DNA of 64,000 bases from Antechinus flavipes (Eukaryota). The notes under the pieces are model-generated. The model searched no databases, was not told where the DNA came from, and saw only the letters and a list, made by a program, of their open reading frames with translations. Both the position numbers and the translations under genes were made by a program. The stretch lies in contig NC_067399.1 in NCBI RefSeq assembly GCF_016432865.1, positions 330,460,001 through 330,524,000 on the forward strand, read 5' to 3'. This document shows, piece after piece, positions 6,479 to 53,293 of this stretch (position 1 is its first letter; the number at the start of each line of letters is the position of its first letter).

Positions 6479-7108
6479 TGAGTCACCACCTACCTTGATC
6501 CTGGCTCTACTACTTACTTTATGACCTTAGATCTTCATTGCCTTAAAGCTATTTCTTCACCTGAAAAATGAAGAGGTTGGACTAAAATGACCTATGAGGT
6601 TCCTTCTGGCTCTAAATCTCCGAATTGTTTGGGTCTTATAGATTTGTATCAGCTTTTTACATGTCATGGAGCTTTGTGAAGCAAAGGTTTGTTTTCCTCT
6701 TTTAAAAAAAAAGAATTTAGAATTTAAAAGAATTCAAAAGGGAGAACATGTCTAAAGGTAGTGGGAGAGGGATCCAATAAAGAGGAAGATCAATGGGGCT
6801 TTTGAGAGTTAGAAAATGGATTTCAAGCTCTCTAAAATGAGTTGCTATGTCCAAAAATAAAAATCAATCAACAGCTCACTGGTCCTCTGAGAACAGATAC
6901 AGGCAATTGGGTTCATATCAGAAATCGTTCCAACAGAGTAGAACTCGCCAAACCTTTCATTCTGATGGCCATAAGCTTTGAAAATCCAGGCACTGATCAT
7001 AGAAGCATCTGAGAAGGGTATTGATAGACATCTCAAGAAATGTTAAAAGAAATGGAGAGACAGAAAACTATGACATATTTTCCAAATTTAACATGAAATA
7101 CTCAGATA

Positions 7109-21260: not shown

Positions 21261-22094
21261 AGGAAAGGCAGAACCTGATACTGACTTAGGTTGGGGACCA
21301 TGAGGGTAACATACTATTTGTGATCAGATTCAGTTGATGTGTCGGTTCATTTTGCTGAATTACTTTTGTTCTCTTTTGTTATTTTTTTGTCAAAAGGCAT
21401 GACTTTTGTTTTAATATGTAATAGGGGAAAATAAAATATTATTAAATAAAAAAAGGAATGACTTGCTAGGAAAGATAGGGGGAGAAATATAGATGACTAT
21501 TGTGGTTTCTTAAATACTTATTCCTAAGTTGGTATCACAGTTTCAGGTTACCTAAATGTTTGAATTCAGAATAATCAGCAAATTGATTGAAGTTTAAAAC
21601 ATTTTTTAAAAAAATCAAATAAAACATAAAACATTTTTTTAAGAGGAAGAATGTCCAGACCTATCATTTTATCTATGTAGAGACTCCTGGTATGAGAATT
21701 TCTTCTACTGATAAAGATTGATAAGTAACATATAAGAGTAAATAATTGCCCATTAAAAAGTATATTGTCACAGGCCCAAGTCTCCCTGACGTTAAAGCTA
21801 CTACACCAGGGATGCTTTTCATTTTTAAAAAAGAAATTTTTATCAAATAAAAAAAACATTTGATCCATGTATCCCTAATGTATATAAAAACAGTTACTAA
21901 TTTAATTCATCACTTATACAGAGAATTCTCATAATTTTTACAAAAAATTGAATATTTGGTATCCAAATCTTCCATAATTGACAACATTGCCATATAAGTA
22001 TTTATTTTTTCTGTGTAGTTAGGTTAGATGACCAAGTATCATTTGAGAGTCCAAGCAATGTAAATCTCATTAGCTATCAGTCCAAGTCATAAAT

Positions 22095-22260
22095 CATAGA
22101 TTTAGGGCTAGAAGGGCCCTTATAAGTAAGTAATCTTGTCCATTCACCTCATTTTTCTAATGAGGAAATAGAAGCCCAGAGTGTTAGATATGCAAATTAG
22201 ATAGGCCGAGATTACACAGTTAGATTGTAGCTGATTCTAAATCCAGCATTCTCTCCTTGC
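22095..22260 (-). mobile_element. MIR3-like SINE
   Basis: catagatttagggctagaaggg...cctcatttttctaatgaggaaatagaagcccagag. Confidence 0.65.
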
Positions 22261-28257: not shown

Positions 28258-28452
28258 NNNNNNNNNNNNNNNNNNNNNNNNNNNNNNNNNNNNNNNNNNN
28301 NNNNNNNNNNNNNNNNNNNNNNNNNNNNNNNNNNNNNNNNNNNNNNNNNNNNNNNNNNNNNNNNNNNNNNNNNNNNNNNNNNNNNNNNNNNNNNNNNNNN
28401 NNNNNNNNNNNNNNNNNNNNNNNNNNNNNNNNNNNNNNNNNNNNNNNNNNNN
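28258..28452. other. Assembly gap (195 N)
   Basis: Run of N; ORFs spanning it are artefacts. Confidence 1.
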
Positions 28453-35300: not shown

Positions 35301-35454
35301 TAATTTATTGCCATTGGTACTGAAAAGTCCAATGGTTTGGTTCCATGTTCAATTTTACCTCTCATGTTTATTAATATCAATTGGACTGATATGGCTTGCT
35401 AACCTGTGTATGTCTGCAACTGAATAGAACAGACCAGAGAGGGTCTACTAAAAG

Positions 35455-38083
35455 CAGCAGTAGCCCTTAATTCTCCATGGTGGTCAGCTACAACCCTAAC
35501 TCTCCAGCACAATATTGAAGGGACCCACAGTTGGCATTGATCTTGGTATTACTTACTCCTACATGAGAGTCTTCCAACATGGGAAAGTAGAGATCATTGC
35601 CAATGACCAAGGCTATGTCGCCTTCACCTATACAGAACATTTAATAGATGCTGGTGCAAAGAATCAAGTTGCAATGAATCCCACCAGCACAGTTTTTGAT
35701 GCCAAATGTCTGATTGGCCAAAGATGTGATGATATAGTTGTACAGTCAAATATAAAGCATTGGCCATTTATGATGCTGAATAATCAGGCAGGCTTAAGGT
35801 TCAAATTGGGAGCAAAGAAGAGACCAAAAGTTTCTTTTCAGAAGAAGTATCTTCTATGGCCTTGCTGAAAGAAATTACTGAAGCTTACTTCAGGAAGACT
35901 GTTGCAAATGCTGTGATCACAGTATCAAGCTATTTCAATGATTCCCAACATCAGACCATGAAAGATGTTGGAACCATCACTCAGCTCAATATGCTCCAAG
36001 TGATCAATGGGCCAGCTGCTGCTGCTATTGCTTATGGCTTGGACAAAAAGGTTGGTGCTGAGAGATTTTGATCTTTGGTCTTGCAGGTGATATTTTTGAT
36101 TTTCCATTGTTACCATTGAAAATGTCATTTTTTTGAGGTCAAGTCCACATCTGGGGACACCCACTTGTTTGGGGAGGACTTTGATATCCATATAATCAAC
36201 CATTTCATTGCTGAGTTCAAGCAAAAGCAGAAGAAGGACATCAGTGAGAAGATGTTCACTATCTGTGCACAATTTGTAAATGTGCAAAATATACCCTTTC
36301 TTCCAGCACCTAGACTTGTATTGCTTTATGAAAATGTCAGCTTCTATACACCAATCACCCAAGCCTGTTTCGAAGAGCTGAATTGCTCTCTTCCATGGCA
36401 TACTGGATGCTATGGGAAAGGCTTTAAGAGATACTAAGGTAAATGAATCACAGATTAATGACATCATCCCGGTGGATGGTTCCATTTGCATCCTCCAAAT
36501 CCAGAACTTCAAGAAATCTTTAATGGCAAGGAGCTCAACAAGAGTATCAATCCTGATGAGGTTATTGTCTGTGGTGCAATTGTCCAGTCTGCCATTTTAT
36601 TTGGAAATAAATTTGAAAATGTGCAGGACTTGTTGCTGTTGGATGTCATTCCTCATTTTTTGGAATTGAAATTGCTGGAGGAATTATGATTGATCAAACA
36701 TAGTACCACCATTCTCACCAAGCAGACACAGACCTTTACTGCCTATTCTGACAATCAAACTGATATGCTTATTCAGGTTTATGAAGATGAGAAATCAATG
36801 ACAAAAGATCACAACCTGCTTGCCAAGTTTGAGCTCACAGGAAATCTTCCCAGAATCCTGGGATATTCCTCAAATTGAAGTAACATTTAACATTGATGCA
36901 TATGGCATTCTCACTTCTGCTGTGGATAAAAGCACAGGCAAGGAGAAAAAGACCATTATCACCAATGACAAAGGTTGTCTGAGCAAAGAAGACATTGATC
37001 ATATATGATCCAGGAGGTTGCGAAATACAAGGTTGAGGATAAGCATAAAGACACGATGCCTTCCAAGAATTCTCTTGAATTTTTGGCTTTCAATATGAAG
37101 GTTACCATGGAAAATGAAAAATTAGTGATAAAGACAAACAAAAGACAAATGTAATGAAATAATCAGCTGGTTGGATAAGAACTAGACTGCTTAGAAGGAA
37201 GAATTTAAGCATCAGCAGACAGAATTGGCGAAGGTCTGCAAAACCATTGTTGCTAAGGTGGGTTCCCAAGGGGTGGAGCAGTTCTTCATTGAAAAGGTTG
37301 ACTAAGCAATTCATAAGAAAGAGCGTTCCACACAACTTTATACCTACCTGACTCTTTTGGGATGTTAAATCCCTTTTAGGATTTAACCTGTCAGCTAAGG
37401 GCATGCCGCAGCTTCATGGGATGTTCCCTTTCTCTTGGGTAATCATAAGTTCCACCAGGGAACTTGTCTTTTTCATCATTATTAAAACTCCTTTCTTGAT
37501 AACTATATGCTCTCCCACTCTGTTTCATATTTTACCACTTCTAGTGCCAATTGTTTCTCTTCATTTTGTCTGTAATCTCCTAAATATACCTACCTTTTAC
37601 CTAAGAGAATGGCCATTGTACATTTTTCATATGTACTGAACCCCAACATTTGATGCTTCTCCTAAAGCACATCATCTGGTGTCACATCATTTACTACGTC
37701 AGCCACATTAGTAATAAGAATGCTTTATGCTCCAAAGAACAATAGTTCATATTCTGCTTCTGCTTCCCACTCCCTATGTTATACCAGGTAAATTATTTTT
37801 TCTCCCTAGGCCTCAATTTCCTCATCTGTAAAATTAGAAGATTGGACTAGACATAATCTAAATTTCCTTCTGGTTCCATATCTGTAAAGGACTCAAATTT
37901 GTAGCCAAGGAGGTAGCAGTTTAAAAGTAACATTTAAGCTACTGTGTAAATCTGGGCATTCTAAATACTTGAATGTGTTTAGAAGAAAACAACATTATAC
38001 TTTATTAATACTGTAATAAGCAAGCAGAATGAATTATTGTCCTGGAGAATAAATTCTATTTAAAAATTGGTGCGAAAAAGAAA
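35455..38083 (+). pseudogene. HSPA8: Processed pseudogene of HSC70 (heat shock cognate 71 kDa), decayed, with 3'UTR and A-tail remnant
   Basis: Intronless CDS remnant 35512-37305: [38 protein letters not shown] (HSPA8-diagnostic), [46 protein letters not shown]; ATG changed to ATA, many frameshifts; 3'UTR 37306-37337 and 37886-38073, AATAAA 38048-38053, gaaaaagaaa 38074-38083. Confidence 0.97.
37338..37885 (-). repeat. Inverted duplicate (derived copy) of 40896-41440, inserted in the HSPA8 pseudogene 3'UTR
   Basis: Reverse complement aligns end to end with 40896-41440: ~30 substitutions in ~535 bp plus indels of 4, 5 and 12 bp (hand count). Confidence 0.97.
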
Positions 38084-39929
38084 TTTAATTTCAAAGTGAG
38101 GGAAATGGCTTACAAGAAAGGATACATGTGCTAGATCTGAGTTGTAACCCAACAACAATGAAACAGGTTTGATTGATGATATAACTGGAATATGGATACT
38201 TGTCTGGTGCTTATCTAAGATCAGAAAACCTCTAGTGGTGGTCAAAGCAATTCAGTAATTATATGCTTTTGCCAGAGGGTGAGATCACCCAAAGCCCAAA
38301 AGTTTGTTGTTATGTCAAGCTCAGGACACAGTTTGCTTGTTGAAGCTTAGCTATAGAAAATAGAGTATCTCCTAATATCCTGACATGTTAAAAAAAAAAA
38401 AAAAAGATTTGGAAATGACCATTATGATCACGAGATAGCAAAGTGATTAGAAAAGTGGAAGAGGATTGCTTTGCTATAGTGAGGGCCCACTTGAGATTAA
38501 GAAGTCAGTCAACATGATTCCATGTTGTTGTTTTTTCCAGGTTTGTTCAGATTTAATTCTGGAATTCAACTCTGGAATTCAGTAAGGTATGATTAGTAAT
38601 AGAACAAAGGGACAAGGGAGTTGAATATGGAGGACAGTATAGAATTGAACCAAAAGGTTAAGGTAGGAAGAGAATACAACCAACACAAAGGTAAAAGAAA
38701 TGAGAAGTATAGGAATTGGAGGATGATGAAGATGAAGAACAAAGTCTAGGGGTATAAAGCATAGCAAAAGATATAATGATAAAAATTAGAAAAAAGATGA
38801 AAATGAAAGTCAGAGAAAAGAAGTTAAAGATCCAGAAATATGCAAATGGAACACTTATGGGGAATGACAAGATAAAGAATGTGTGTGTTTGGGCTTGAGT
38901 AGAGGAATAAATCATAGGAATTGAGTAGGTTGAGGAAGTAGGAAATTAGGATATTGGGTGAGCATTGTTTTCAATACTGAAGTCTCACATTTTTAGATCT
39001 TAAGATATGAGTCTTGCTTCTGCTTCTCACTGGCTTGCTATTAAGCATTGCTTTAGACTTTGCTGTCTCTTTAGTGTCCTATAATCTTTTTATTTCTTGT
39101 GGTTCCTCAATACCAGAACCATTAGTACCTAAAACAGAAATCTTTGCCAGTTCTTTGCCATTTCTGTCCCTATCCCTATACCCAAGAGAGGCCAAGGGAA
39201 TTAATACTATATTGATTTCCCTTTTAAATTACAGAGGACCCACCAGCTACAATAGAGTCATGTAGCTCTATCTAGTATCAGATAGACACAAATCAGTTCC
39301 AGAATTCTATATGTTAACAAAAATCAAGCCAGGCCATGACTGAGAATTTGACCCCTCATAGAAGGAATGCTATTCAATGAGAGAAAAATTCCTGATCACA
39401 GTTTCTGCAGGATGTGTCCCAAGGGAAACTTGTAGCACATTAAACATCCCAATTTTTCATGGGCATGAATCCCTGGAAATTATGCACAAAAAATTTTTTT
39501 CTGGTGCACTAGTCAATAGAACTATGTCTGTCTAGGGAGAGGAGGGACTAGATTGGCATTAAAGTATGAAAGTATGTTCTGGGATTTAGTATAGGACTTA
39601 AACATAAATTCTACCTTAGTGAAAGTGATAGAAACTTTTTCCAATTCCATTAAATAACTATCTGATAAAAGACCTGCTTTGGCATCCAATCACAGCTTTA
39701 TTGGAGGCTATACCAGCCAGTATCTTATTTCTCAATTTAGAAGAGCCCATGTTTTTCAAAGCAACAACGTCACCACCCTAAAAACTTGGCATCTTACTAA
39801 GGTCATGGTTGTCCTGTGGACCAGCAGGGCATTTTTCATTTTGGAAAAGAATATGGGAAGCTGGTGGCAGTAAAAGCTGTAAGTAGTCTACAGAGAGATA
39901 ACCTCCAGGAGAACCAAATACTCCCTTTG

Positions 39930-40800
39930 AATCTCACCAACCAAGTCCTTTGTCCTGCCTGTTCTTGCTCTTTAACCTTGAACTTTTAGGGGATCATAAC
40001 ATTCTAAATTCAAGCTTTTGTGAACTCCAGGGCCTCAGCCAATTTCTGGATATGAATGCCAAAGCAATATTCCTTAAGCACAGATTTGACTATGTCACTT
40101 GTCTATTCAATAAGCTGGCATGGTTCCCTATTACTTCTAGGATCACACCAATTCCTCTCTTTGATATTAAAATTCCTTCAAAATCTGACTATATGCATTA
40201 TTTTTCATCTCCTAATACTCTCAGGAATCTGGGTATTGTGGTGGATGCAGAGTAGGGCCTGAAGTCAGGAATTCTTATCTTCCTGAGTTCAAATCTGACC
40301 TCAGACACTGACTAACTGTGTGACCCTGGACTTTATTCTATTTGCCTAAATTTCTTCATCTGCAAAATGAGCCGGAGAAGGATATGGCAAATCACTCCCA
40401 TATCTTTGCCAAGAAAACCCCAGATAGAGTTGCACACAACAGAAATGACCCAAGAACAATAAAATAACATCATAAGTTCTGCAGTCTGGCCAAACTAGTT
40501 TCCCTCTACAACATGCTACCTTCTATCTTTGTGACTTTATACAGGAAGCCCTCCATTCCTGCAAGTGCCCCCCCTTTCACTCCTCTACTTCTTAGTCTAC
40601 CATTTCCTTTAAAGCTCAACTACAAGAAACTCTTCCTGATCCCATCTGCTGTTGGTTTTTCTCCCCAAATTATCTTGAATTTATTCTGTATATATTTGTA
40701 GATATAATCATTTCTCACAATAGAATGCATCTTCTGTGAGTACAAAGAGTATTTTATTTTGACTTTGAATCCACAGTAGCTGGTATAGAGTAGTTTGTAA
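39930..40800 (+). mobile_element. L2 3' portion interrupted by a Mar1 SINE
   Basis: gccaaagcaatattccttaagcacagatttgactatgtcac; aggaagccctcc; agaatgcatcttctgtgag. Confidence 0.75.
40228..40470 (+). mobile_element. Mar1-type SINE
   Basis: gtggtggatgcagagtagggcctgaagtcagg...catctgcaaaatgagccggagaaggatatggcaaatcactccc...gccaagaaaacccc. Confidence 0.85.
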
Positions 40801-40895
40801 TAAAACCTAAGTGGTTTAGGTCACTGAAGGATAACATAGCCAGGCAATATTGGAAAACAATATAAAGGAAGACGTCTCCTTTAATTTATATTTTA

Positions 40896-41440
40896 ACAGA
40901 TATGGAATTAGATTACATTTAGTCCAATCTTCTAATTTTACAGATGAGGAAATTGAGGCCTAGGGAGAAAAAATAATTTACCCAGCATAACATAGGGAGT
41001 GGGAAGCAGAAGCAGAATATAAACTATTGTCCTTTGGAACATAAAGCGTTCTTATTACTGATGTGGCTGACGTAGTAAATGATGTGACACCAGATGATGT
41101 GCTTTAGGAGAAGCACCAAATGTTGGGGTTCAGTATATGTGAAAAATGTACAATGGCCATTCTCTTAGGTAAAAAGTAGATGTGTTTAAGAGAAGAGGTT
41201 ACAGACAAAATGAAGAGAAACAATTGGCATTAGAAATGGTAAAATATGAAACAGAGTGGGAGAGCATATAGTTATCAAGAAAGGAATTTTAATAATTAAT
41301 GATGAAAAAGACAAGTTCCCTGGTGTAATTTATGATTACCCAAGAGAAAGGGAACATCCCATGAAGCTGGGGCATGCCCTTAGCTGACAGGCTAAATCCT
41401 AAAAGGGATTTAACACCCCAAAACAGTTAGGTAGGTATAA
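40896..41440 (+). repeat. Donor copy of the inverted duplication (MIR fragment, unique DNA, part of an LTR)
   Basis: Pairs with 37338-37885; its right breakpoint lies inside the LTR that continues to ~41880. Confidence 0.97.
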
Positions 41441-41880
41441 GAAGAAAAGAGACACCATAAAGCATGATGGGAAATCAGAGGAGAAATACCATGTGGCATA
41501 GGGAAGGGGTGAAGGAGTGGACTGACCCTAATGGTCTTGAGCCGTGGACAGATTTTATAGGAGAAATTTAACCTCAGAGAAAGGACTGGGATTTCTGACA
41601 GGACATAACTGGGCTGCCCATGACCTCCACAGAGGGTGATCCCTTGGGATTTGACATAATTTGGATTTCTTGGCTGGACACAACAAGACCAGGCTGTAAG
41701 GTTAAGCTCATTCCCAAAGTGCCCTTCCTTGTTTGCCTCAGGTTAATACTTCAGACTTTCTCTGCCAAAGGCACACAGTCATCCAGTACCTCATTACCAC
41801 ACTACCAGCCTGGATTTCTCTATCGTAACCCAGAAAGTCCTTATCAAGGAAGTTCACTTCAGGGCTCATATCCATTCACA
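41138..41880 (-). mobile_element. Solo ERV LTR (related to 52482-53293)
   Basis: Starts TG; shares atggccattctctt...ttacagacaaaat...aaatatgaaa...gttatcaag with the 52482 element; minus-strand TATAAAA near 41545-41552; right boundary uncertain. Confidence 0.6.
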
Positions 41881-52481: not shown

Positions 52482-53293
52482 TATGGCAAGTTCCCAATGG
52501 CCATTCTCTTTGCCAAAAGGTAAGTTTATTTAGGATAAGAGATTACAGACAAAATAAAAGGTAAAATAGGCACTAGGAGTGACAAATATGAAATAGATTT
52601 GGGAAAGCAATAGGATTATCAAGGAAAGGAATTTGAAAGAATCCACTAAAGGAACATACCATGAAGTGTGAGTACACCATTGACTGGCAGGTTAGATCCA
52701 TAAAGAAATTTAGCAGACTAACCAGAATTAGCTAGAGAAAAACAACATTAAGGGAAGACACTAAAAGGGGGAGAGAGAGTGCCTCATAATGTCTTAGTCC
52801 TAGAAAGAATTTAGCAAAGATCTTCATTACGATCAGATCTTTTATAGGGGAAATATAGGCTTGAGGGTTTCACGGAGAAACCGGGGAAGTAAAGGCAGAA
52901 TCTCTGAGGGAGGAATCAAGGAGGAAGGGAAATGCCAGGGAGTTCAGAGGGGATCAAAAAGGAGCTAGATGGAATACTTGGTAGACCAGGTCTCAGATCT
53001 CCCTAAAGATATGCTAATCAATACCTCAAAGGATGTTTAAAGATGCCCGGAGTTTGGGAGATAGACAATGGAGGCTTGATAAAGAGTTCCTTCCTCACAA
53101 TCACTCTATACAAAAGGGATAGCCAGGGACTTGGTTATACCTGATACTAGATAGATGGGCTTCTTCCTGAGAGGGGAAGAGGGCAAATCCAAATCAAGAG
53201 GTGGGAATATTTCTGTAGATTGGCTCCTGTCTAGGGGATTTCCCTCCCAAAAAGAACTCCAGTTCTGAATATGAGTATAAGGCAAGGTACACA
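52482..53293 (-). mobile_element. Solo ERV LTR (~810 bp)
   Basis: Ends t(a)tgg...caca; minus-strand TATAAAA (~52841-52847) and AATAAA (~52526-52531); homologous to the 41138 LTR. Confidence 0.7.

What the first reader, a model, noticed from the sequence alone, without database searches (positions are those of the whole stretch)
37338..41440. Locally templated 548-bp inverted insertion that splits the HSPA8 retrocopy 3'UTR, with donor and recipient identifiable
Seen: 37338-37885 is the reverse complement of 40896-41440 (~30 substitutions in ~535 bp, ~94%, plus three indels, hand count), with a 3.0-kb spacer. HSPA8 3'UTR-like sequence stops at ...gttccacacaactt, resumes right after the insert (aaaggactcaaatttgtagc...ctgggcattctaaatacttgaat...) and runs to AATAAA and an A-tail. 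So the left copy is the insertion and the right copy the donor. The copied segment is not one transposon: it spans a MIR fragment, unique DNA and the first ~300 bp of an LTR, and breaks inside that LTR. It has no TSD or poly(A), and junctions show only 1-3 nt microhomology. Inference: a double-strand break in the pseudogene was repaired by copying nearby DNA in inverted orientation (template switching, e.g. SDSA/MMBIR). This happened long after retrotransposition, since the two copies are far closer to each other than the pseudogene is to HSPA8.
Basis: partly seen in the sequence, partly recalled or inferred. Interest (0 to 1): 0.75.

Follow-up and report, generated by a model that had tools for sequence, protein, structure and literature searches.

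The report
Backwards local copy inside dead HSPA8 retrocopy
A 548-base stretch lying 3 kb downstream was copied backwards into the tail of an old, dead HSPA8 (HSC70) retrocopy, most likely as a scar of DNA break repair or a replication slip; this is a known kind of event, already seen several times in this genome.

Summary
Window 37338-37885 is the reverse complement of 40896-41440: 536 aligned bases, 29 substitutions (94.6% identity, K2P 0.057) and three indels of 4, 5 and 12 nt, with 3,010 nt between the arms.

The left arm sits 32 nt after the stop codon of an intronless, heavily decayed HSC70/HSPA8 copy. It is followed by about 190 nt ending in AATAAA and an A-rich remnant, so it lies inside the retrocopy.

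The retrocopy has about 27% amino-acid divergence from HSC70, or roughly 0.14 substitutions per site. That is about five times the per-lineage divergence of the arms (0.028), so the insertion came long after retrotransposition.

I found no target-site duplication, poly(A) tail, terminal repeats or other full-length copy in the window. With the source only 3 kb away, a DNA-templated local event is favoured over transposition.

Several points remain untested:
- colinearity with the parental 3'UTR
- an empty site in relatives

One arm end lies within about 10 nt of a SINE 3' end, which keeps an RNA-mediated rival alive at low odds. The scan has already noted at least six similar inverted local insertions elsewhere in this genome. 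This is a real scar of a known kind, of modest interest.

The parts
35512..37305 (+). Decayed, intronless HSC70/HSPA8 coding remnant (processed pseudogene), stop codon at 37303-37305
   Evidence: Stop-free pieces hit HSC70 chains best: E 1.3e-37 against 8e-34 for HSPA2 and 2.6e-32 for HSPA1A. Residues 3-517 map colinearly on about 1.49 kb in three alternating frames with many stops. Identity is about 73% over about 300 aligned residues.
37306..37337 (+). Presumed 3'UTR, part 1 (32 nt between the stop codon and the insert)
   Evidence: Read directly from the sequence. Identity with the parental UTR was not testable with the tools.
37338..37885 (+). Inserted inverted copy (left arm, 548 nt)
   Evidence: It is the reverse complement of 40896-41440 at 94.6% identity. 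It lies inside the retrocopy's 3' end. No TSD, A-tail or terminal repeats.
37886..38083 (+). Presumed 3'UTR, part 2, with AATAAA (38048-38053) and an A-rich tail remnant (38075-38083)
   Evidence: Read directly from the sequence. Single copy in the window.
40896..41440 (-). Presumed donor (right arm, 545 nt)
   Evidence: The interspersed repeat it contains may continue past 41440 (p 0.06-0.08).
41151..41462 (+). Interspersed-repeat fragment inside the right arm (equivalent to left-arm 37338 to about 37627)
   Evidence: A third, 77-79% identical copy lies at 52495-52767. Its family is not identified; the 'LTR' label is unverified.
37839..37885 (+). 3' part of a MIR-like SINE fragment at the end of the left arm (the fragment starts near 37790)
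   Evidence: 37839-37883 aligns with the tail of the SINE copy at 6574-6619. The alignment with the SINE copies at 6500-6625 and 22074-22127 shows the SINE consensus runs only about 8-12 nt past the arm end.
52495..52767 (+). Third, older copy of the interspersed repeat, used as outgroup

Best explanation
An L1-type retrotransposition placed an HSPA8 (HSC70) mRNA copy here, and it decayed as a pseudogene. Much later, at roughly one fifth of the retrocopy's age, the DNA broke or a replication fork stalled 32 nt after the old stop codon. A free 3' end primed on the same-sense strand about 3.5 kb downstream, near 41440, either on the same molecule or on the sister chromatid. It copied about 550 nt back to about 40896, then released and was joined to the other side of the break with little or no homology. 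The result is a non-tandem inverted duplication: a locally templated insertion of the MMBIR/FoSTeS or synthesis-dependent end-joining kind. Both arms then drifted neutrally, accumulating 29 substitutions and three indels. Shown here: the repeat, its position inside the retrocopy, its relative age, and the lack of transposition hallmarks. Inferred: the break, the priming site, and the enzyme pathway.
For: - The inverted repeat is real and far beyond chance.
- The left arm lies between the stop codon (37303-37305) and the AATAAA plus A-rich remnant (38048-38083) of an intronless HSC70 copy.
- The retrocopy has about 27% amino-acid divergence from a protein that is nearly invariant in mammals (my knowledge). 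That gives about 0.14 substitutions per site, against 0.057/2 = 0.028 per arm.
- No direct repeat flanks the insert, no A-tail follows it, and there are no terminal inverted repeats.
- No other full-length copy exists in 64 kb. Only a 143-270 nt piece recurs, at 52495-52767, with 77-79% identity. The unit is therefore a mosaic of a SINE fragment, unmatched DNA and part of another repeat, not one element.
- The source is 3 kb away. A random landing within a few kb of the source has odds of about 1e-6 in a genome of a few Gb (inference).
- Each arm carries private indels whose polarity can be read. The 5 nt missing from the left arm is present in the third copy. The 12 nt missing from the right arm is present in other SINE copies.
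- Substitutions are spread evenly and the longest identical run is 63 nt, so there is no sign of recent gene conversion.
- Germline templated insertions by template switching are documented (PMC8421209, PMC7954356, PMC5120786).
Against: - Colinearity of the two UTR pieces with the parental HSPA8 mRNA was not tested by any tool. My recollection of the human HSPA8 3'UTR fits, but it is memory, not a test.
- Continuation of the repeat beyond 41440, which would show the right arm is in its native context, is only suggestive.
- The arm end at 37885/40896 lies within about 10 nt of a SINE 3' end. That could be chance, or a hint of an RNA intermediate.
- Microhomology cannot be measured.
- At 548 nt the insert is far longer than the short-range template switches catalogued in apes (median 12 nt, maximum 128; PMC7954356).
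Confidence: 0.72

Rival explanations
1. RNA-mediated copy. A transcript on the minus strand started in or near the repeat at 41440 and ended at the 3' end of the SINE near 40896. A LINE reverse transcriptase that recognises that SINE tail (L2/RTE type, no poly(A) needed) picked it up and reinserted it nearby.
For: The arm end 37885/40896 lies within about 10 nt of where other copies of this SINE end. Stringent-type LINEs leave no A-tail and often no clear TSD (my knowledge).
Against: Landing 3 kb from the source is very unlikely for retroposition (about 1e-6). There is no tail or microsatellite at the 3' junction and no TSD. The SINE fragment is an old, decayed relic, about 74% identical to another copy. 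The exact SINE terminus could not be fixed.
Confidence: 0.08
2. Both arms are independent copies of a third locus, or of a low-copy composite repeat elsewhere in the genome. The right arm would then not be the donor.
For: Native context of the right arm is not firmly shown. With the third copy as outgroup, more changes fall on the right arm than the left, about 7 against 2.
Against: Two independent landings 3 kb apart are improbable. No further full-length copy exists in the window. The 7-against-2 asymmetry is not significant.
Confidence: 0.07
3. The insert was acquired during retrotransposition itself: the reverse transcriptase switched template to local nucleic acid and back. The arms were later kept similar by arm-to-arm gene conversion.
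For: Template switching by L1 reverse transcriptase is known (my knowledge). Inverted arms 3 kb apart could in principle convert each other.
Against: The arms are about five times younger than the retrocopy. Differences are evenly spread, each arm has private indels, and there is no long identical tract. Two switches returning to nearly the same mRNA position would be needed.
Confidence: 0.05
4. Inversion with an inverted duplication at its ends (staggered-break model), or an assembly artefact.
For: Inverted duplications flanking a segment are the signature of staggered-break inversions (my knowledge).
Against: An inversion would require the spacer to be flipped. Yet the piece right after the insert continues the retrocopy's tail in the same orientation, with its poly(A) signal. 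An artefact cannot create a 5.4% diverged copy with indels, and the nearest gap is 9 kb away, at 28258-28452.
Confidence: 0.03

Closest known systems
Microhomology-mediated templated insertions (MMBIR / FoSTeS; 'MMB-TI') in germline genomes (PMC8421209)
   Same: A stretch copied from a nearby template, often in reverse orientation, is inserted at a site that is otherwise colinear. There are no transposition hallmarks. Such events are known to accumulate as neutral germline variants.
   Different: Microhomology at the switch points, the defining feature, cannot be read here. This is a single-template, 548-nt event 3 kb from its source, and it is old and fixed.
Short-range template switches in great ape genomes (PMC7954356)
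   Same: A reverse-complement copy of nearby sequence that creates an inverted repeat in the descendant.
   Different: Those events have a median of 12 nt and a maximum of 128 nt, with templates within tens to hundreds of bases. This one is 548 nt and 3 kb away.
Class 2 templated sequence insertion polymorphisms (DSB 'patch' repair; PMC5110952)
   Same: An insertion of templated sequence without TSD or poly(A), consistent with repair of a double-strand break.
   Different: TSIP templates are distant, often on other chromosomes, and are reported to derive from RNA. Here the template is local and includes non-genic repeat DNA.
Other inverted local templated insertions noted by this scan in the same genome (s1-179139, s1-183204, s1-208957, s1-198807, s1-179135, s1-215361)
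   Same: Inverted copies of 76 nt to 1.9 kb taken from about 1-5 kb away and pasted into neighbouring repeats or introns. Follow-up agents read them as repair or replication scars.
   Different: This one lands in a datable processed pseudogene, which gives a relative age. It is one piece, not two. The scan notes are unchecked AI notes.

Membership tests
Locally templated insertion by template switching or DSB repair (MMBIR/FoSTeS/SDSA/TMEJ type) | The inserted sequence matches a nearby genomic template | tested here: met
   94.6% identity over 536 nt to a stretch 3.0 kb downstream, inverted
Locally templated insertion by template switching or DSB repair (MMBIR/FoSTeS/SDSA/TMEJ type) | The target is colinear across the insert (the pre-insertion sequence is reconstructible) | tested here: inconclusive
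   The order stop codon, 32 nt, insert, about 160 nt, AATAAA, A-rich remnant fits one mRNA tail. No parental HSPA8 mRNA or empty site was obtainable.
Locally templated insertion by template switching or DSB repair (MMBIR/FoSTeS/SDSA/TMEJ type) | Microhomology or blunt joins at both junctions | not testable with these tools
   This needs the pre-insertion sequence. The target and donor flanks share 3 nt or less at either junction.
Locally templated insertion by template switching or DSB repair (MMBIR/FoSTeS/SDSA/TMEJ type) | The donor is retained in its native context | tested here: inconclusive
   The local alignment with the third repeat copy runs 22 nt past 41440. The downstream extension alone has p of 0.06-0.08 and is not significant.
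LINE-mediated retroposition (processed or transduced copy) | Target-site duplication | tested here: not met
   No direct repeat between the 20 nt on either side of the insert
LINE-mediated retroposition (processed or transduced copy) | Poly(A) or LINE-type tail at the 3' junction | tested here: not met
   At most three A residues follow 37885, and the presumed UTR resumes at once. However, the arm end lies within about 10 nt of a SINE 3' end.
Dispersed transposable element (single family) | Several full-length copies; defined termini (TIR or LTR ends) | tested here: not met
   Only two full-length copies in 64 kb. The only partial third copy covers 143-270 nt. No terminal repeats. Genome-wide copy number was not testable.
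Inversion with flanking inverted duplication (staggered breaks) | The segment between the arms is inverted relative to the ancestor | tested here: not met
   The segment starts with the continuation of the retrocopy tail in the same orientation as the coding remnant. This rests on the unverified UTR identity.
HSPA8 (HSC70) processed pseudogene | Best match to HSC70 rather than other HSP70 paralogues | tested here: met
   E 1.3e-37 (HSC70), 8e-34 (HSPA2), 2.6e-32 (HSPA1A). The same order appears. In one search only HSC70 chains reach 1e-28.
HSPA8 (HSC70) processed pseudogene | Intronless, frame-disrupted, with a poly(A) signal and tail | tested here: met
   Residues 3-517 map colinearly on about 1.49 kb, with frameshifts and stops. 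AATAAA and an A-rich remnant are present. No TSD could be recognised.

The most novel reading that the evidence does not exclude
This insertion may be one instance of an unusually frequent process in this marsupial lineage. With it, the scan has noted at least seven inverted, locally templated insertions of 0.08-1.9 kb in about 620 windows (about 40 Mb). These are far longer than the short-range template switches catalogued in great apes (median 12 nt, maximum 128 nt). If a census confirmed hundreds of such long inverted patches genome-wide, at a rate or length above that of eutherians, it would point to a lineage difference in how stalled forks or breaks are processed. Those patches would also seed long inverted repeats that can fold transcripts into double strands.
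Probability: 0.12. Interest if true: 0.55.

Novelty: new member of a known kind. Interest (0 to 1): 0.3.

Why it matters
The host sequence is a processed pseudogene whose parent protein hardly changes. That gives the event an unusual combination: a polarity (which copy is the insert), a relative date (about one fifth of the retrocopy's age), and a nearly reconstructible pre-event sequence. It is therefore a clean, neutral example of a long (0.5 kb) inverted templated insertion fixed in a germline. It would be useful as a data point for rates, lengths and distances of template switching in mammalian genome evolution. It also serves as a warning that such patches can be mistaken for transposon insertions or inversions. 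By itself it does not change any view of mechanism, and nothing suggests a function.

Tried and rejected
- **Read laying.** I laid 36900-41700 on four runs of related organisms, with likeness set to 80 so that contigs of the parental gene would also be caught. Later work used 37844 onward or local alignments of the window only.
- **The look-up of sequencing runs.** It listed DNA holders in ten coded organisms (word shares 0.77 down to 0.05) and no RNA holder. Without laying them I cannot say which parts they hold.
- **The look-up of encoding contigs.** I asked for the 100-aa minus-strand ORF that spans the left junction.
- **Retrocopy TSD.** Only a 9-mer at chance level turned up.
- **Repeat continuing past 41440.** The result was not significant to marginal.
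- **SINE 3' terminus.** It could only be placed to within about 10 nt.
- **Earlier scan notes near this place.** None were found.
- **Protein-database route to a parental 3'UTR.** I did not try it. Length limits and the ban on read-through translations make full-length HSC70 unreachable from the stop-free pieces, and hits could be human.
- **Other points.** No contig taken for human was handled. The N run at 28258-28452 was left alone.
- **Readings rejected.** Staggered-break inversion, because the spacer is colinear with the retrocopy. Twin priming, because the insert is foreign to the mRNA. Deaminase- or editing-driven divergence, because all four transition types occur.
Full report
**Observation.** The inverted repeat is in the sequence at the stated coordinates.
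- The repeat finder on 35-43 kb returns three colinear inverted segments that together cover 37338-37861 and 40908-41440 at 93-96%.
- blastn of either arm against the whole window gives 92.9% over 533 nt, E = 0.
- A global alignment of 37338-37885 with the reverse complement of 40896-41440 gives 536 aligned positions, 507 identical (94.6%), 26 transitions, 3 transversions and K2P 0.057. There are three indels: 4 and 5 nt absent from the left arm and 12 nt absent from the right.
- After the 12-nt indel a further 12 bases are shared up to 37885/40896.

The spacer is 3,010 nt. The nearest assembly gap is the N run at 28258-28452, which I left alone.

**What the left arm sits in.** Translating 35400-37340 in three frames gives a string of stop-free pieces that switch frame. 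Searched one at a time against solved structures, four pieces hit HSC70 (HSPA8) chains best.
- 35500-35865 matches residues 6-109, with E 1.3e-37 against 8e-34 for HSPA2 and 2.6e-32 for HSPA1A.
- 35784-36068 matches residues 99-193; only HSC70 chains reach 1e-28.
- 36690-36875 matches residues 413-467.
- 36802-37005 matches residues 464-517.
- A fifth piece, 36462-36686, found nothing at the strict threshold I set.

These residues map colinearly on about 1.49 kb, so there are no introns. The last in-frame piece ends at 37302 and the stop codon is 37303-37305. This is a processed pseudogene of HSPA8.

After the stop come 32 nt, then the 548-nt arm. About 160 nt follow, ending in AATAAA at 38048-38053, with an A-rich remnant at 38075-38083. 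That layout is what one mRNA tail split by an insertion looks like.

The two flanking pieces agree with my recollection of the human HSPA8 3'UTR. That is memory, not a test. No tool gave me a parental mRNA. No target-site duplication of the retrocopy itself can be recognised any more.

**Relative age.** My count on the printed alignments gives about 80 mismatches in about 300 aligned residues, or about 27% amino-acid divergence. The parent protein is almost invariant among mammals (my knowledge).
- With about 2.25 non-synonymous sites per codon, this is roughly 0.14 substitutions per site on the pseudogene lineage. It is probably an underestimate, since only stop-free pieces were used.
- The arms differ by K2P 0.057, or 0.028 per lineage.
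- The duplication is thus about five times younger than the retrocopy.

Recent gene conversion could fake this, but several observations count against it.
- The differences are evenly spread: 3-9 per 100 nt, with a longest identical run of 63 nt.
- Each arm has private indels of readable polarity. The 5 nt missing from the left arm is present in an older third copy of the repeat.
- The 12 nt missing from the right arm is present in other copies of the SINE at 6500-6625 and 22074-22127.

So the left arm copied an ancestor of the right arm, and both have drifted since.

**What the copied unit is.** Within 64 kb there is no further full-length copy. Only the part 41151-41440 (left-arm 37338 to about 37627) recurs, at 52495-52767 with 77-79% identity.

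The middle matches nothing else in the window. The unit is therefore a mosaic, not one element. It has no terminal inverted repeats, no flanking direct repeat and no A-tail.

- The claim that the repeat continues past 41440 in the right locus, which would show the right arm in its native context, is only suggestive. The whole-element local alignment runs 22 nt beyond the arm end, and a colinear downstream alignment reaches shuffle p of 0.06-0.08. Shorter tests are not significant.
- The other arm end lies within about 10 nt of where this SINE ends in other copies. An RNA intermediate ending at the SINE tail would predict exactly that.

**Mechanism.** The strongest argument is distance. A retroposed or transposed copy lands within a few kb of its source with odds of about 1e-6 in a genome of a few Gb. 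DNA-templated repair and replication template switching, by contrast, prefer nearby templates.

The inverted orientation means that the strand ending at 37337 primed on the same-sense strand near 41440 and copied back towards 40896. This is the geometry of fork or D-loop strand switching, or of a resected end invading the sister chromatid or the other side of the break. The joins carry at most 3 nt of flank-to-flank identity. True microhomology cannot be read without the pre-event sequence.

I therefore take a locally templated insertion of the MMBIR/FoSTeS or synthesis-dependent end-joining kind as the best reading, at 0.72. Sequence alone cannot separate repair of a double-strand break from a replication slip.

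The rivals, in order, are as follows.
- LINE-mediated retro-copy of a local read-through transcript ending at the SINE tail (0.08).
- Both arms copied from a third locus (0.07).
- Capture during retrotransposition, followed by arm-to-arm conversion (0.05).
- Staggered-break inversion or assembly artefact (0.03). The inversion is excluded if the tail piece after the insert is truly colinear. An artefact cannot create a 5% diverged copy with indels.

**Comparison with what is known.** Germline templated insertions formed by microhomology-guided template switching are described in humans. There they are said to accumulate as neutral variants over evolution (PMC8421209).

Short-range inverted template switches are common in great ape genomes, but they have a median of 12 nt and a maximum of 128 nt (PMC7954356). 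Class 2 templated sequence insertion polymorphisms are DSB patches without TSD or poly(A), but they come from distant templates (PMC5110952). Larger templated pieces occur at the junctions of complex insertions and CNVs (PMC5120786, listed; I did not read it).

The present case fits this family in behaviour. It is larger and more distant than the short-range class, and it is older and fixed. The defining microhomology could not be tested, so membership is by resemblance plus the exclusion of transposition.

The scan has already noted the same kind of event on other DNA of this genome at least six times. Three of these were followed up and read as repair or replication scars, one of them reported as shared by related species. 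Those are unchecked AI notes and I did not test them. They lower the surprise of this finding and raise a census question.

**What could not be done.**
- Three tests therefore remain open: parental-UTR colinearity, an empty site in the related organisms listed, and read support for the junctions.

**Verdict.** This is a real, well-delimited and datable inverted templated insertion inside a dead HSPA8 retrocopy. It is a new member of a known kind, it recurs in this genome, and nothing suggests a function. Interest 0.3.

Noticed in passing
window 37338-37885 vs 40896-41440: The 29 substitutions between the arms are 26 transitions and 3 transversions. All four transition types occur and only 2 are in CpG context. 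P is about 0.005 if transitions were two thirds of changes. There is no directional bias that would point to deamination or editing. Unexplained.
   Followed up: partly
window 41151-41440 / 37338-37627 / 52495-52767: I polarised arm differences with the third repeat copy, by eye on the alignment. About 7 changes fall on the right arm and about 2, plus a 5-nt deletion, on the left. Numbers are small and the asymmetry is not significant, but it is the opposite of what error-prone copying into the left arm would give.
   Followed up: partly
window 38086-38406: A clean 17-nt poly(A) run lies at 38390-38406, about 310 nt after the retrocopy's own A-rich remnant. The stretch before it matches nothing else in the window. 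It could be a second small retroposed piece inserted behind the retrocopy. It could equally mark a longer 3'UTR isoform of the source mRNA.
   Followed up: no
window 37862-37873 (absent after 40908 in the right arm): The 12 nt present only in the left arm match the corresponding part of other copies of the SINE (6500-6625, 22074-22127). The presumed donor therefore lost them after the copy was made. The insert preserves the older state.
   Followed up: yes
The tool's message says the filter also trips by chance. No letters of these places were sent to search tools afterwards.
   Followed up: no
window 36900-41700: Word shares of this stretch fall in steps across coded organisms: A 0.77, B and C 0.55-0.59, D and E 0.24-0.26, F to J 0.05-0.08. 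This is a ready-made series of relatives for dating the insertion once the locus can be laid.
   Followed up: no
window 28258-28452: A run of 195 N (assembly gap or masked).
   Followed up: no
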